Shown here: positions 21,734 through 46,475 of the stretch, piece by piece
How positions within the stretch are numbered: position 1 is the first letter of the stretch
Layout: each line of letters starts with the position of its first letter
DNA from: Mizuhopecten yessoensis
Lineage: Eukaryota
DNA length: 64,000 nucleotides
Direction: 5' to 3'
NCBI RefSeq assembly: GCF_002113885.1
Contig: NW_018408891.1
Location: 621,633-685,632, forward strand
Position numbers and translations under genes: made by a program
Notes under the pieces: generated by a model
The model's database searches: none
Seen by the model: only the letters and a program-made list of their open reading frames with translations
What the model was told of the DNA's origin: nothing

Positions 21734-22554
21734 GTTATGGCCACAGTACACCAAAAACGATCGGCGGAAAACTCTTTTGTATGTGCTATGCCCTGGCAGG
21801 AATTCCATTATGTATGATCATGTTCCAAAGCGTCGGTGAAAGACTCAACACTTTTGTGACATTTGCATTAAGGCAAGTCAAGAAATGCTTCCGGTTGAAA
21901 AACAAAGAGGTAACCCAAACGGATTTAATATTTATAACAATGAATTTATCCACCTTAATACTGACCTGTGGTGCCCTGGTGTTTTCACATGTGGAAGGCT
22001 GGACTTATGTAGACGCATTCTACTACAGTTTTATCACATTGACGACCATAGGTTTCGGGGACTTTGTCGCGCTCCAACAAGATAATATGGTACAGAGCAA
22101 ACCACATTACTTTGCTTTTAGTATCTTATTCATTCTATTTGGTTTAACTGTTATTTCGGCAGCCATGAATTTACTGGTTTTGCGGTTTCTTACGATGAAC
22201 ACAGCGGACGAACTTAGAGACGAAAGAGAGGCTGCAGTAGCGGCCCGAAATGCAGTGCATCTTGAAGGTGACGTCATAACCGGAAATAACGGAGTAGTCT
22301 CTAACCTGCAAGAACAGCCCATCGGACCGATAGTAGAGGACACTCTCTCTGTATGTTCTTGCTCGTGCTATAAGTGGAGGTCACCAACTGACAAGGTCTA
22401 CTCGACAAGTCCCATGGCTAATCATCTGCGTAGAAAATTTAAGGCAAAGAAGGGAATGGACAGTCACGAATACTCGAAGGATGCCGAAAGTAATATCTCC
22501 GAGGACACCGACTCCTTCATCAACTGGCAGAGGGATAAACGGGCATCACTTTGA
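21734..22554 (+). CDS. TASK-subfamily K2P channel, coding exon 2 (P1 GYGH, M2, M3, P2 TTIGFGD, M4, C-tail). Spliced protein 367 aa
   Basis: GYGHSTPKTIGGKLFCMCYALAGIPL, FQSVGERLN, TLTTIGFGDFVALQ, X-gate VLRFLT (243-248), C-terminal KRASL-stop (TGA 22552-22554). Confidence 0.96.
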
Positions 22555-25459: not shown

Positions 25460-25660
25460 ATTAAGGGTTGAAAGCACTTCCCCTTTTGTTAATACATTTT
25501 CAGTGGTTTAGATAAAATCTATTTGAACTTTCCAATTGTTTGACCCCAAGCACCACCGATGATAATTAGAAGGATGAAAAAGCAGTGTAATTCATGTTCG
25601 TACATTGTATCCGATTTTAAAGGTGTGATTGCCTCTCTGTGTGCTACGTTCATCATTCTA
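25460..25660 (+). mobile_element. Degenerate copy (locus C) of the hammerhead-containing repeat family
   Basis: GCACCA-CCGATGA(25556-25562)...GAAGGATGAAA..GCAGTGTAA. Flanks ATTAAGGG..GCACTTCCCC..CAGTGGTTTAGA and TTAAAGGTGTGATTG..GTGTGCTACGTTCATCA resemble loci A and B. Stems II and III are destroyed. Confidence 0.6.
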
Positions 25661-42170: not shown

Positions 42171-42484
42171 GTTTGTTGTGTTTTACGTCCTATTAACAGC
42201 TATGGTCATTTAAGGATGTGCCAGGTTTTGGTAGTGGAGGAAAGCCGAAGTTCCCGGAAAAAACCCCATCGACCTACTGCCAGTACCTGGCTAATGCCCC
42301 ACATAGGTCTCGAACCCGCGACCCAGTGGTAGAGGGCTAGTGTAGCCCACGTAGGTCTGGAACCCGCGACCCGGTGGTAGAGGGCTAGTGTAGCCAACAT
42401 AGGTCTCGAACCCGCGACCCAGTGGTGGAGGGCTAGTGATAGCAGAATGTCAGACGCCTTAACCACTTGGCCACCGCGGCCTCC
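42171..42484 (-). mobile_element. tRNA-derived SINE with V-domain-like body and a triplicated B-box segment
   Basis: Minus strand: GGAGGCCGCGG-TGGCCAAGTGG (A box)...GGTTCGAGACC (B box), central GGTTTTTTCCGGGAACTTCGGCTTTCCTCCAC, tail GCTGTTAATAGGACGTAAAAC. A 48-bp segment is repeated three times. Confidence 0.85.
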
Positions 42485-45438
42485 ACATAGTATACTAGAA
42501 TAATCACTAGGAATGCAAAGTAAGTATGTGTGTTCATGTCTTGTTTCAATCCTGGAAAATATTTAACAAAAAAAGTAAGGAAAGACCTTTTTGCATTCAG
42601 GCGAAGTTCAATTTGTTTATTGCACCTATACGTCCATTAGGTATACCAAGGACTCGCCAGTAGCACTAAGGGAGACGGAACACTAATCCATGTAAAACGT
42701 GTTCCACATACTGGTAGAAACATTATACAATACATTACACATTTCAAACTGTGCCGAGCTAAAGTCCTCTGAGAGTTTGGTGACAAAGTACTTTTCCTGT
42801 TTTTCCTCTCTAAGAAACATTTGTTATTACAAAAAATGTATTATTATTAGATAACACCGCTCTTATTTGAAATCTTCCATTACAGTGTTTTATTTGTTTG
42901 TTTGAGGCAAAGCGCCTTCGCTAACATTCTTTGCCACATGATAACGCTATTTGGTTTTAGTTAAGCAATTTAAGTGACCATACCGCCTCCACTTCCATGC
43001 CGTTGTTTGGCGTTTTTGGAAGATAAGAAAATAAAAGTTTGTTGAATCCCATCTACTATTTTCAGAACAATGCCTGGTCATACAACATAAAACCAAGGTT
43101 CAATCAGTCATGGGATACACTATAGAACGAGGGGCTAGCCATTAAAGCGATACGCCTTGGAAAGAAGGGCCAGGCGGTCACACATAAAGGATACGGAATA
43201 GCAACGCAGTGGAGATAATAACGGGACACACAATGGAATCACATGTCCGCTGTTTACCGGATATACCACGGAGACAAGATCCATCTCTCACGGGAGTAGG
43301 AAAAGGCGGTCATGGGGATACTACGGAAACACAACAAGAGAAAGAGATGGAAAGTTCAAATCACCAATACAACAAAATTACACTTGATTTCGTTGTTGCA
43401 CCTTTTTGCGTTTGTTAATTTGATACTCTGTAGTTTGCTTCCAATAACACAATGATTAGCTGTGAAACAATCAATCAAGCGATCGAGATTGTTGGAGAGC
43501 CGTTGCAGTGGGCTGTGTGCTGTGTGCTTGGTGCTGGGGTTGATGACTCAGTTTTCAGAATGTGAATTTTATTGATATTTAGCGGTATGTTCTAAATTGT
43601 AATGCCAAAGCGATTCCTGGAGTATGTATGTAAGACCAGACAGTTCATACCGGAAAGAAATAATAAAAATGAATAAAAAAGAAAAGTTTTTCTATGAATA
43701 ATAAAATATAATATAAACACACTAAAAAGCGAGCAGCGTTTGACCGAACAGGTTTTTTTCCGGGAAGCTATTCAAGGTAGACTTAAGTTAATTTTGGATT
43801 ATGAGTAGTTCCTGATGTATTTCACAGAAACTGGCAGAAATCACTATGGCGTGAGTCTAAACTATATTTTCCTCTGATTATCATTGAAAATATTGATAGA
43901 TCAATATATAAATGTATCTTCTGGTTTTATACTCTAGATATATTCATTAATTTCCTCCAGTTAACTGACCTAGCATGGTACATGTAGCAGAGTAGGAATA
44001 AAGAACTCTTAAGTGTTTAATACCTGCAACATATATTATTATGTGATAAGTTTTTGTTTTGATACTGCTGTAAATATATTTGACGGTTTATTCTGTTTAT
44101 TGATGTAGACGTTGACTTATCTTGGTGTTTTCTGCAATATCATTAAGAATGCGTAGTAAATCATCAATGTGACATGAATTATATAATACTTGTGTCTTCC
44201 CCAATGTACACAATTCCTTACATGTATGTTGTTCTGCACCACGAGAAGAACTATTAATCAATACAATTACGTAAGATATCCAAACTAAAGGCGAACTCAA
44301 TTCAGAAAAATATATACACGGATGTTCGTTGAACTGACGATGACTAGTTCAAATCACGATCTGTTACAGACCGGCAGACAATATTGAAATAAAGACGTCG
44401 CTATCATCTCATGTCTGGGTCTAACATGGTCTTATGTAACGGACAATGTGATTACACGACATTCAAATGACTAAAACACATACATATGTGTATGTACAAT
44501 CAGACTCGAGGCATACCCTTCTATCGTAACAAATGTCAAAACAATTACAGTTACTCACTTTGATGTTTATACGAGAAGCATTCCAAGCTAAATTCGATAC
44601 AGAGTCGATTCCTGCTGTTTTAAATATAGACTCAGGAGACTGCGTCTTTAATAGAAATTCGTTTGATAAATGGGTTCTCTACGATCACGAATTAAATGTG
44701 CATGATAACGCCTACGTAAGATATTGATGTATACAGTTTACAACAAAACAAAACCATTTAACAATCAGTAAAACATGTATGCGTTATACAAAGATGTGTG
44801 TTTTGCTATTTAGTTCCATAAATATATACTGACTATTCATTGAATTCGGGCAAAAGCATTTATTTTTAACTTTTGTGCGAATCCCAGAAGCTCAGAGGTA
44901 GGAAGAACTAAAAGTGAAGGCGCTAAAACGCAACAACAGAAATCTAGAAAACATCCTTCATTTCATATACTTTCACTTCCACTTTTTGTAAGCGTCCAGG
45001 ATATCTTTTTAGGAAATTCTCCTCAAATTCTTCTTGTTTTTCTCTATATCGACTAAATGTTGCGTGCAAACATTGCGATACAAATCGTTTGTGTCACTTC
45101 AAGTCATTCTAGAAAGGCTTAGCAGCTGTATGATGCAGTGTAGTTCCTTGTTGGCATGCCATTACCAAGTGTTAAAGGTGCAGTCGACTGTATGTGTGTA
45201 ACGTTCATCAACTAAGATACAAGGTAGACTCAACTGGTGAAGTTTAAGTCCTCCAGGTTTACATTTCCCCTGATTAACATAGTTTTAATGGAGGCACGGT
45301 TCATACTACAACCCCTTGACATTTTTGTTTTATTTGAAATTATCCATTACTCCTTCAAATTTTGAAATTCATAATTGAAGGGATTTTACGCACCTACCCC
45401 TCTGTATCAACAGTGATTAAGATGGTTTTGCTACTACT

Positions 45439-46044
45439 ATTCTATTATGGTCCTTTCCTGAGGGAACTGTTCTCTTATAGTGTTGTCTGGAGAGGTATAA
45501 TGCCCTCGCCTAACGGCTCGGGTACTATACCTCTCCTGACAAACACTATAAGACAACTGTTCCCGAGGGAGAGGGTCATAATTGATTTAGTACATCACAT
45601 GACTGTCATTTGGTAATAGAAAGTAACATATTTAATAGTTAACAACAAATGCCAATAAGATAATTGTTTGAGAAGATCTCTCTTTTTTTGTTGTAGGAAG
45701 TAGGAAGACTTTAAGGACTGCGATGTGAAATGGTGTCGTCTACTTCGTCTTAATGTATTGCTGAGCCTCTGCGAAGCAATCGGCATTCCTGGTCCCGAAA
45801 TTCGAAGCCATTTTGGCAGACGACAACAATGAAGTGAAAGTAGAATATATACAGTGCCCCCTAGGAGAAGGGTCGTAGAGTCACGATATTTTTCACGCAG
45901 TCTCAGCTGTCCAAAAAAAAGGTATAGTGCCCGTCTCCAGGTATAGTTCCCGTTGTCAAGGGCGGATGCTAACTATACCAAACAGAACAAGGGTAGTTAT
46001 CCAATAGCTATCCTAGAAATTATCATGTGATGTAATAAATTCTA
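45439..46044. mobile_element. 600-bp hairpin-headed non-autonomous DNA element with 6-bp flanking direct repeat ATTCTA
   Basis: 139-bp hairpin at 45444-45582. Inverted pair ATTTAGTACATCACATGA (45585-45602) / TCATGTGATGTAATAAAT (46023-46040). ATTCTA at 45439-45444 and 46039-46044. Confidence 0.75.
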
Positions 46045-46088
46045 GCATCACCGATGAGTCCCAGAAGGACGAAACGCCTGTTTGATGT
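46045..46088 (+). ncRNA. Minimal type I hammerhead ribozyme (core CCGAUGA)
   Basis: GCATCA-CCGATGA-GTCC-CAGAA-GGAC-GAAA-C-GCCT-GTT-TGATGT: stem I, perfect 4-bp stem II, GAAA, short stem III, GUU triplet (predicted cleavage after 46082). Confidence 0.82.
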
Positions 46089-46475
46089 AGTGTATTTATT
46101 TCTTTGCATACTGTTAAACCTGTGTGTGTTACGTTCATTAATACCATTTGTAGCAAACAGCCGCACAATATTTATGGTACCATAACCAAGTTTGAACAGT
46201 CGATATAGAGTGCAATAGATGCAGGTGCCTCTTTAATCGGCGGATGAGAAGAGTATGTTATGCTAGACTCTAAGCCACACGACAGAGCTTAGTGTAAACG
46301 TAGTTCTTTGGTAGAACACTGCTCTATCTATTCCTTCCATAAGCAGAAATACAGTCTAAAACGCAATGTCAAATATCAACAAAATCAATGTATACAAAGT
46401 TTATGTATTTACAACAATTATGAAACGATGCGTTCAAACTTAAAATTAATAACTCGTGTTGGTCTGAATAAACAC

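What the first reader, a model, noticed from the sequence alone, without database searches (positions are those of the whole stretch)
45120..46145. Dispersed ~350-415-nt repeat family with junctional hammerhead ribozymes: candidate retrozyme/self-cleaving circRNA system
Seen: a complete type I hammerhead fold at 46045-46088 and the 3' half of another at 45123-45141. After removing a 600-bp insertion the two junctions are 352 nt apart, and the sequence after each junction is repeated. The same monomer occurs on the minus strand at 34830-35325 (junction spacing 414 nt, also running on into a second monomer) and as a relic at 25460-25660. Established: tandem monomers of a few hundred nt bounded by type I hammerheads are the architecture of metazoan non-LTR retrozymes (reported in mussel, coral and axolotl as abundant circular RNAs) and of Penelope pseudo-LTRs. 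Inference: this is a non-coding, ribozyme-processed mobile RNA family. Three loci within about 21 kb suggest high genome-wide copy number.
Basis: partly seen in the sequence, partly recalled or inferred. Interest (0 to 1): 0.88.

Follow-up and report, generated by a model that had tools for sequence, protein, structure and literature searches.

The report
Decayed hammerhead-bearing retroposon copies
The three loci are old, mutated insertions of an abundant non-coding mobile element that carries a hammerhead ribozyme motif, a kind already described in molluscs and other animals, and nothing here shows them to be active today.

Summary
The window has three copies of one repeat family: 45115-46140 (+, split by an unrelated 600-bp repeat), 35340-34810 (-) and 25460-25663 (+). 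Junction spacings are 352 and 414 nt, as reported. The motif at 46045-46088 is a type I hammerhead by architecture, but it scores 26.2 bits against Rfam's cut-off of 34 and has C instead of U at core position 4.

The family is large genome-wide (at least 1353 candidates) and old. Copies are about 17% from the majority base, and no young copy was found among about 80 sampled. Copies share one 3' end about 86 nt past the cleavage site and are 5'-truncated at all lengths. The longest span about 1.3 units, with a hammerhead in each terminal repeat. No long tandem arrays were seen, and no copy is attached to a shared ORF.

The U4C core belonged to the founder. Copies with the canonical core are scattered CpG-decay products.

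Four RNA-seq runs gave no read at 95% likeness or more on the minus locus, no joints and no end pile-ups.

Verdict: these are fossils of a Penelope-type, retrozyme-like, non-autonomous retroposon. It is a new member of a known kind. The retrozyme architecture is partly supported; present circRNA activity is not. Other readers flagged hammerhead repeats elsewhere in this genome.

The parts
45115..45438 (+). 5' part of the plus-strand copy. It begins inside the 3' part of an upstream hammerhead (helix III and the helix I 3' strand; cleavage-equivalent site after 45130). The tail-like segment (to about 45210) and the unit body follow.
   Evidence: Profile hit at hmm 50-382, E 5.6e-50; sequence read; inverted-repeat match to 35226-35289.
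45439..46038 (+). Unrelated 600-bp dispersed repeat inserted into the plus-strand copy. Its left end is a hairpin of about 145 nt, and ATTCTA stands on both sides.
   Evidence: At least 269 genomic candidates, full-length copies at 79-83% identity; hairpin arms 45441-45484 / 45542-45585; removing it restores colinearity with the minus copy.
46039..46140 (+). 3' part of the plus-strand copy: end of the unit body, the hammerhead motif and the 3' tail ending in ...GTGTGTGTTACGTTCAT.
   Evidence: Profile hit at hmm 402-474; tail read and compared with the family tails.
46045..46088 (+). Type I hammerhead motif. Helix I is GCAUCA/UGAUGU, the core is CCGAUGA (U4C), helix II is GUCC/GGAC, followed by GAAA. 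Helix III is 2 bp with loop GCCU, and the cleavage triplet is GUU (site after 46082). The family's helix III palindrome is lost in this copy.
   Evidence: Rfam RF00163 at 26.2 bits against a gathering score of 34, E 0.042; the MFE fold reproduces helices I and II, z -1.4; no dimer helix III.
34810..35340 (-). Uninterrupted minus-strand copy of about 1.25 units. It starts in the 3' part of an upstream hammerhead (site after 35317), runs through a 414-nt unit to a decayed hammerhead (34940-34897, core CCAAAGA, site after 34903), and ends in a decayed tail.
   Evidence: Profile hit at hmm 52-541, E 1e-130; sequence; fold; no RNA read at 95% likeness or more.
25460..25663 (+). 5'-truncated relic: the last ~90 nt of the unit, a hammerhead remnant with a deletion across helix III and the cleavage site (about 25550-25585), and the tail ending in GCTACGTTCATC.
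   Evidence: Profile hit at hmm 326-540, E 2.6e-19; alignments; no hammerhead fold.

Best explanation
The three loci are dead insertions of an old, abundant, non-coding retroposon family of this animal genome. A full-length copy is about 1.3 units long. It has a type I hammerhead at the 5' end, a unit of 341-415 nt, a second hammerhead, and a tail of about 86 nt. The body is therefore flanked by direct terminal repeats of about 135 nt, like a miniature Penelope-like element with pseudo-LTRs but no ORF. This is the same kind of element as animal non-LTR retrozymes. Shown: copies are dispersed on many contigs, share one 3' end, and are 5'-truncated at every length. That pattern is the signature of reverse transcription primed at the target from the RNA's 3' end. 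Inferred: a Penelope-like reverse transcriptase/endonuclease supplied in trans did the copying, and the hammerhead processed or marked the template RNA. The hammerhead is minimal, with a 2-bp helix III whose 8-nt palindrome ACAGCUGU lets two motifs pair as a dimer. The founder carried C at core position 4. After the burst the copies decayed neutrally. The window copies have lost core bases or the dimer palindrome, each lacks a complete upstream ribozyme, they lie in an apparently intergenic stretch, and the one tested for RNA (the minus copy) is not detectably transcribed. They have no present function.
For: Family size: 1353 first-look candidates, with 40 scored at 67-85% identity. 174 exact 25-nt hammerhead cores were counted genome-wide. 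Architecture: profile coordinates of 81 copies give 5' ends spread continuously from -31 to -439 nt and 3' ends at +75 to +100. Aligned depth drops from 20 to 2 sequences at the tail end. The tail motif, allowing 2 or fewer substitutions, is in 30 of 81 copies at median +86, against 0-4 in control windows. The longest copies (L006, L014, L017, L026, and the window's minus copy, L001) all begin within about 8 nt of the helix I 5' strand of an upstream hammerhead. Only one locus of about 80 has two hammerheads, 383 nt apart. Age: pairwise identity has median 72-77% and maximum 86%; identity to the majority base is 0.81-0.83. Hammerhead: Rfam RF00163 hits the same position in 15 of 19 loci scanned at the E-value threshold, 13 of them family copies, at 23-31.6 bits and E down to 6e-4. 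Helices are paired in 85.8% of cells against 17-42% in slid controls. The dimer with an 8-bp helix III is predicted 14.5 kcal/mol better than two monomers. No shared ORF: homology never exceeds about 440 nt upstream or about 100 nt downstream, and no listed intact-core copy lies within 30 kb of a listed GIY-YIG match. The genome does hold many GIY-YIG elements, at least 370 candidates. Literature: the mussel retrozyme has units of 350-390 nt, about 5000 hammerheads and low GC (PMC7229834). Penelope-like elements carry the hammerhead near the 3' end, have pseudo-LTRs, and have non-autonomous derivatives with head-to-tail insertions (PMC8557442). Retrozymes are reported as derivatives of Penelope pseudo-LTRs (bioRxiv 10.64898/2026.07.22.740005).
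Against: Target-site duplications are not clearly above chance: matches of 7 nt or more occur in 18% of copies against 8% of controls. No hammerhead of the family reaches Rfam's gathering score. Base pairs show no covariation, so the structure rests on the founder sequence alone. Self-cleavage was not assayed. The one RT fragment next to a copy (L075/L091) is most like R2/LINE enzymes, so a LINE partner is not excluded.
Confidence: 0.75

Rival explanations
1. The family is a currently active retrozyme: tandem units are transcribed, self-cleaved at the hammerheads, ligated into circRNAs of 350-415 nt and reverse transcribed into new copies.
For: Unit size, GC content and hammerhead type match the mussel retrozyme. 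The hammerhead region is slightly better conserved than its flanks (0.85-0.92 against about 0.82). U4C hammerheads can retain enough activity in vivo for a viroid (PMC3088659). RNA reads from other family copies exist at low depth.
Against: No copy pair is above 86% identical among about 80 sampled, including 55 chosen for an intact core. No array longer than about 1.3 units was seen. The window copies lack a complete upstream hammerhead. There were 0 reads at 95% likeness or more, no joints and no read-end pile-up in four RNA runs of about 12 million reads each; depth on the hammerhead was at most about 35 at 80% likeness and was similar in the PolyA and RANDOM libraries. Unit RNAs are not more stable than shuffles (z +0.7 to -2.1).
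Confidence: 0.07
2. The loci are ordinary pseudo-LTRs or solo remnants of autonomous Penelope-like elements, not a separate non-autonomous family.
For: The hammerhead lies near the 3' end and the copies have partial-tandem terminal repeats, as in Penelope-like elements. GIY-YIG elements are abundant in the genome.
Against: In about 80 copies homology stops within about 440 nt upstream and about 100 nt downstream, and no ORF is shared. Full-length copies have a discrete 5' end with only about 265 nt between the repeats. No listed intact-core copy is within 30 kb of a listed GIY-YIG match.
Confidence: 0.06
3. The family is a SINE-like element copied by a LINE (non-LTR) enzyme through a shared 3' tail. 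The hammerhead is a passenger inherited from an older element with no part in mobility.
For: The common 3' end with 5' truncation fits LINE-type priming equally well. An R2-like RT fragment lies 490 nt downstream of one copy. The founder core is non-canonical.
Against: Only one adjacency was seen in about 80 loci, and no second family copy flanks that RT. The terminal-repeat, partial-tandem build is typical of Penelope-like elements, not of LINE-dependent SINEs. No tRNA/5S/7SL-type head was seen at the 5' end, which is the hammerhead itself.
Confidence: 0.1
4. The hammerhead resemblance is a chance motif in an ordinary repeat.
For: All Rfam scores are below gathering, and one core base deviates.
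Against: The founder has all three helices, 12 of 13 core bases, an NUH triplet and the helix III palindrome typical of animal type I motifs, in the right order within 44 nt. Rfam E-values go down to 6e-4 in 57 kb, at the same position in every copy. The reversed-pattern control gives 0 genome hits against 123.
Confidence: 0.02

Closest known systems
Metazoan non-LTR retrozymes (Cervera and de la Pena 2020, PMC7229834), especially the Mytilus galloprovincialis retrozyme
   Same: Non-coding, low-GC unit of a few hundred nt (mussel 350-390; here 341-415) with a type I hammerhead at the unit junction. Helix III is very short with an 8-nt palindrome (mussel ACGCGCGU, here ACAGCUGU). Thousands of genomic copies.
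   Different: Here copies are single insertions of at most about 1.3 units with a fixed 3' end, not dimers to large multimers. The founder core has C4 instead of U4. All sampled copies are old. No circular or unit-length RNA was seen.
Pseudo-LTRs of Penelope-like elements and their non-autonomous derivatives (Craig et al. 2021, PMC8557442; Li, Clavereau and Pollet 2026 preprint)
   Same: Hammerhead near the 3' end, direct terminal repeats produced by partial tandem copies, a short tail beyond the ribozyme, and 5' truncation.
   Different: No RT-GIY-YIG ORF lies between or beside the repeats. The partner element was not identified.
Schistosoma Sm-alpha hammerhead-bearing SINE-like repeats (from my own knowledge; not checked against a sequence here)
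   Same: A dispersed short retroposon carrying a type I hammerhead of the GAUGAGUCC...GGACGAAAC kind.
   Different: Sm-alpha has a canonical, active core. Relatedness beyond the ribozyme was not tested.
Viroid hammerhead variant with U4C (cited in Perreault et al. 2011, PMC3088659)
   Same: The same core substitution in a natural hammerhead. It is reported to lower activity in vitro yet still allow infectivity.
   Different: That is a single viroid variant. Here U4C is the founder state of a whole genomic repeat family.

Membership tests
Hammerhead ribozyme type I (Rfam RF00163) | Conserved catalytic core CUGANGA ... GAAA | tested here: not met
   The window + copy and 27 of 31 unbiased family copies read CCGAUGA (U4C). 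The minus copy reads CCAAAGA, and the relic has further changes. All other core bases are present in the + copy and in the founder.
Hammerhead ribozyme type I (Rfam RF00163) | Three helices around the core, with helix I open (type I), and an NUH cleavage triplet | tested here: met
   Full-length alignment to the model at 46045-46088. The MFE fold gives helices I and II. 85.8% of cells are paired across 32 copies, against 17-42% when slid. Triplets are GUU (window) and GUA (family).
Hammerhead ribozyme type I (Rfam RF00163) | Score at or above Rfam's gathering threshold (34 bits) | tested here: not met
   26.2 bits in the window. No gathering hits in the window or in 20 related loci. The best family copy, with a canonical core, scores 31.6 bits.
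Hammerhead ribozyme type I (Rfam RF00163) | Self-cleavage activity | not testable with these tools
   Needs an in vitro transcription assay. RNA reads show no end pile-up at the site, but depth is very low.
Metazoan non-LTR retrozyme | Short non-coding repeat unit (about 170-400 nt), low GC, type I hammerhead at the junction | tested here: met
   Units of 341-415 nt with GC 0.35-0.39; no shared ORF; hammerhead at the junction.
Metazoan non-LTR retrozyme | Tandem arrangement, from dimers to large multimers, each unit bounded by complete hammerheads | tested here: not met
   Window copies span about 1.1-1.25 units with only the 3' part of the upstream motif. The longest genomic copies span about 1.3 units. 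One locus in about 80 has two motifs. No two listed intact cores are closer than 12 kb.
Metazoan non-LTR retrozyme | Expression as unit-length linear and circular RNA | tested here: inconclusive
   There were no reads at 95% likeness or more on 33900-36400 and no joints in four RNA runs. Reads from paralogues cover only the conserved 3' part, at depth of at most about 35. The libraries were not made for small non-polyadenylated RNA, and only one locus could be laid.
Penelope-like element pseudo-LTR | Repeat flanks, or is continuous with, an RT plus GIY-YIG ORF | tested here: not met
   Homology limits. Pfam on neighbouring ORFs found only one RVT_1 fragment, which is R2-like. No co-location with GIY-YIG matches.
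Penelope-like element pseudo-LTR | Hammerhead near the 3' end, within direct terminal repeats made by partial tandem copies | tested here: met
   The hammerhead ends about 86 nt from the common 3' end. Terminal repeats of about 135 nt are present in full-length copies.

The most novel reading that the evidence does not exclude
A hammerhead-bearing retroposon family reached thousands of copies while its founder ribozyme carried the normally crippling U4C core change. Either the dimeric animal type I hammerhead tolerates C4, or efficient self-cleavage is not what Penelope-type retroposition needs from the motif. The motif might instead serve as a fold recognised by the reverse transcriptase. A weakened ribozyme might even be favoured, because full cleavage would remove the 86-nt 3' tail from which copying starts.
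Probability: 0.2. Interest if true: 0.55.

Novelty: new member of a known kind. Interest (0 to 1): 0.3.

Why it matters
Repeats with type I hammerheads are already known across animals, including a bivalve, so the existence of this family adds a member rather than a principle. Two points have some value. First, the copy-end statistics give a clear picture of how such elements insert: one fixed 3' end, graded 5' truncation, and a full length of about 1.3 units with a ribozyme in each terminal repeat. This favours a Penelope-like, 3'-primed copying of a terminally redundant RNA over free rolling-circle copying. Second, the founder's U4C core is a natural test of whether self-cleavage is needed for the spread of these elements, and a simple cleavage assay could settle it. 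For genome annotation, the three loci should be masked as repeats, not called ribozyme genes.

Tried and rejected
- Rfam at gathering threshold gave nothing on the window or on 20 related loci. Only sub-threshold hits appear at the E-value threshold.
- The covariation test on 32 copies is indistinguishable from shuffles (85.8% against 85.4% paired), as expected for neutral decay of one founder. It gives no independent support for the fold.
- I tested whether copies with the canonical core form an active subfamily, and rejected it. They are no closer to each other (0.707) than to U4C copies (0.702; permutation p 0.77) and are equally old. Genome-wide core counts are CCG 123, CTG 33 and CCA 18, which fits CpG decay with at most a slight CTG excess.
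- The search for target-site duplications was weak and inconclusive.
- Circular folds of six unit-length RNAs are not more stable than dinucleotide shuffles.
- An RT fragment sits beside one copy (L075/L091). It matches only RVT_1, its best solved relatives are R2 enzymes, and no second family copy flanks it. I treat it as a chance neighbour.
- A 434-aa open frame after the L063 copy has no Pfam hit and overlaps other open frames, so it is probably repeat-derived.
I did not try another route.
- The first, loose test of the tail motif was uninformative because control windows also matched. It was replaced by the stricter test.
- Literature string searches for the U4C core and for hammerhead plus scallop returned only unrelated papers.
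- Species identity: runs and organism are coded. The assembly size and contig count recall the Yesso scallop assembly, but this is from memory and untested.
- In one search I used a hand-typed majority string of the terminal repeat as an alignment probe, only to locate 5' ends. No consensus is given in this report.
Full report
**Observation**

A profile built from six long genomic copies finds four segments in the 64-kb window and nothing else:
- 35340-34810 (-)
- 45115-45425 (+)
- 46042-46114 (+)
- 25460-25663 (+)

Pairwise local alignments among the loci score far above shuffles (87 against 21 +/- 2.4). The repeat finder had already paired 34881-34943 with 46042-46104 and 35226-35289 with 45162-45225.

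The junction spacings of 352 nt (after removing 45439-46038) and 414 nt are exact.

The removed 600 bp is a separate dispersed repeat. It has at least 269 candidates in the genome and full-length copies at 79-83% identity.

**The hammerhead**

Rfam gives no hit at gathering threshold in the window. At the E-value threshold, Hammerhead_1 aligns end to end to 46045-46088 at 26.2 bits (cut-off 34; E 0.042).

Helices I and II fold as expected. Helix III is 2 bp, and the cleavage triplet is GUU.

The core reads CCGAUGA, so U4 is replaced by C. The minus copy's motif (34940-34897) reads CCAAAGA. The relic has lost the helix III and cleavage-site segment and does not fold.

**The family in the genome**

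The window is contig C5564 of a 988-Mb assembly in 82,659 contigs.

A search with the minus copy gave 1353 first-look candidates, of which 40 were scored at 67-85% identity.

Exact counts of the 25-nt hammerhead cores genome-wide are 123 for CCGAUGAG..., 33 for CUGAUGAG... and 18 for CCAAUGAG.... The reversed control patterns gave none.

In an unbiased sample, 27 of 31 copies have C at position 4.

The canonical-core copies are no more similar to each other than to the U4C copies (0.707 against 0.702; permutation p 0.77), and they are equally old. They are therefore CpG-deamination products of a founder that had U4C, not an active subfamily.

Even these canonical copies stay below Rfam's cut-off; the best scores 31.6 bits.

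**Architecture**

I mapped 81 copies to profile coordinates.
- The 3' ends cluster at +75 to +100 nt past the cleavage site.
- The 5' ends are spread continuously from -31 to about -440 nt.
- Aligned depth collapses at the tail end.
- The tail motif TTACGTTCATC, allowing 2 or fewer substitutions, is present in 30 of 81 copies at median +86, against 0-4 in control windows (by eye).

The longest copies all begin within about 8 nt of the 5' strand of helix I of an upstream hammerhead. A full-length element therefore consists of a hammerhead, a unit of 341-415 nt, a second hammerhead and the tail. This amounts to about 135-nt direct terminal repeats around a body of about 265 nt.

Only one of about 80 loci has two recognisable hammerheads, 383 nt apart. 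No two listed intact cores lie closer than 12 kb. The family is thus dispersed as single insertions of at most about 1.3 units, not as arrays.

Both long window copies start at profile position 50-52, inside the 3' part of the upstream motif. Neither has a complete upstream ribozyme.

**Age and selection**

Pairwise identity between copies has a median of 72-77% and a maximum of 86%. Identity to the majority base is about 0.82.

This also holds for the 55 copies that were picked because their core is intact, which is the sample most likely to contain young copies.

Base pairs of the hammerhead are kept in 85.8% of cells. This equals the shuffled expectation and shows no compensatory change, so it reflects neutral decay of one founder.

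The hammerhead columns are only slightly better conserved than the flanks (0.85-0.92 against about 0.82).

**Relation to coding elements**

Homology among copies never extends into a common ORF.

Of the long open frames near copies, one is a neurotransmitter-gated channel exon and one is an RVT_1 fragment. The closest solved relatives of that fragment are R2 enzymes, and it has no second family copy beside it.

The genome holds many GIY-YIG elements. There are at least 370 candidates, and many have identical scores and long open frames.

None of the listed GIY-YIG matches is within 30 kb of a listed intact-core hammerhead copy. I established this by comparing the coordinates.

The partner element therefore remains unidentified.

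**RNA**

No RNA run holds the minus locus in its contigs.

I laid four raw-read RNA runs on 33900-36400 at 80% likeness: two 'RANDOM', one 'cDNA' and one 'PolyA', with about 11-13 million reads each. The results were:
- No read at 95% likeness or more.
- Every laid read fits only in part.
- No joints.
- No place where molecules begin or end.

Reads from paralogues cover 34824-34991, the conserved hammerhead and tail region, at depth of at most about 35. This depth is similar in the PolyA and RANDOM libraries and on both strands, with loose ends that run into other sequence. This fits family copies embedded in other transcripts, not an abundant ribozyme-processed RNA.

Only one stretch could be laid, and the libraries are not designed for small circles, so absence at family level is not proven.

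Unit-length RNAs folded as circles are not more stable than shuffles (z +0.7 to -2.1).

**Mechanism**

One fixed 3' end with graded 5' truncation is the mark of reverse transcription primed at the target from the 3' end of the RNA.

The terminal redundancy with a ribozyme in each repeat is the build of Penelope-like elements and their non-autonomous derivatives (PMC8557442). It is also the build of animal retrozymes, now argued to derive from Penelope pseudo-LTRs (bioRxiv 10.64898/2026.07.22.740005).

The discrete 5' end at the start of the upstream hammerhead argues for a terminally redundant linear template of about 1.3 units rather than open-ended rolling-circle copying. This step is inference.

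The family-majority hammerhead has an 8-nt palindrome (ACAGCUGU) as helix III. It is predicted to dimerise with a gain of 14.5 kcal/mol, as described for the weak monomeric type I motifs of amphibian retrozymes (PMC7229834). The window's + copy has lost this palindrome.

U4C is reported to lower activity in vitro while still allowing a viroid to be infectious (PMC3088659). Whether the founder ribozyme cleaved is therefore open.

**Context**

The last exon of a two-pore potassium channel lies at 21781-22554 (+). No ORF with a Pfam hit lies between about 22.6 and 55 kb. The three loci are therefore most likely intergenic, which fits the lack of locus-specific RNA.

**Comparison and verdict**

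The closest described relatives are the mussel retrozyme and non-autonomous Penelope derivatives. The mussel element shares unit size, GC content, hammerhead type and a palindromic helix III.

The family differs in four ways:
- It lacks tandem arrays.
- Its founder core has U4C.
- It is old.
- No circular RNA was detected.

It fails the strict tests for a canonical hammerhead (core, Rfam cut-off) and for a retrozyme (tandem units, circRNA). It works, or once worked, like a Penelope-type hammerhead retroposon.

It is a new member of a known kind and of modest interest. The only unusual feature is that the family spread with a U4C core.

Other first-stage notes report hammerhead-bearing repeats elsewhere in this genome; I did not examine them.

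Noticed in passing
window 45439-46038: The 600-bp insertion is itself a dispersed repeat: at least 269 candidates, full-length copies at 79-83% identity, and a subfamily of its 3' 340 nt at 88-90%. It starts with a hairpin of about 145 nt and is flanked by ATTCTA on both sides. It is younger than the hammerhead family it interrupts.
   Followed up: partly
L049 (G000:C1444:1069843-1072867): The segment just after the hammerhead cleavage site (ACAGCTGTATGGTGC...GGTGTATGGT) has expanded into a satellite of more than 1.5 kb next to a family copy.
   Followed up: no
L064, L076, L080, L083 (about position 1500 in each): These are other hammerhead motifs with a canonical CUGAUGA core but different helix I/III and flanks. 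They belong to further hammerhead-bearing families in the same genome; L064 and L083 score 24-26 bits in Rfam Hammerhead_1, while L076 and L080 gave no Rfam hit at E <= 1.
   Followed up: no
whole genome G000: There are at least 370 GIY-YIG candidates. About 90 have an identical 28.3-bit score and open frames of up to 3061 aa, which suggests a young, abundant Penelope-like (possibly Naiad-type) family. The loci could not be read.
   Followed up: no
window 21781-22554 (+): Terminal exon of a two-pore-domain potassium channel (Ion_trans_2, E 7e-14). The three hammerhead loci lie downstream of it, in sequence without recognisable coding exons up to about 55 kb.
   Followed up: partly
window 29300-30680 and 42298-42441: Three adjacent minisatellites with periods of 26, 34 and 31 nt, and a 3 x 48-nt tandem repeat with GC-rich units.
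   Followed up: no
window 30986-31152 and 31961-32067: Long near-perfect hairpins (44-51-nt arms, 90-91% complementary) that give sub-threshold microRNA-precursor hits in Rfam. They are probably foldback or MITE-like repeats.
   Followed up: no
window 34236-34487 and 35664-35747: RNA reads at 80-95% likeness pile up here in all four runs with loose ends on both sides. These are short pieces of other repeat families that are expressed elsewhere.
   Followed up: no
L023:2221-3198 (+): An exon of a neurotransmitter-gated (Cys-loop) ion channel lies about 500 nt from a family copy (Neur_chan_LBD, E 7e-46).
   Followed up: no
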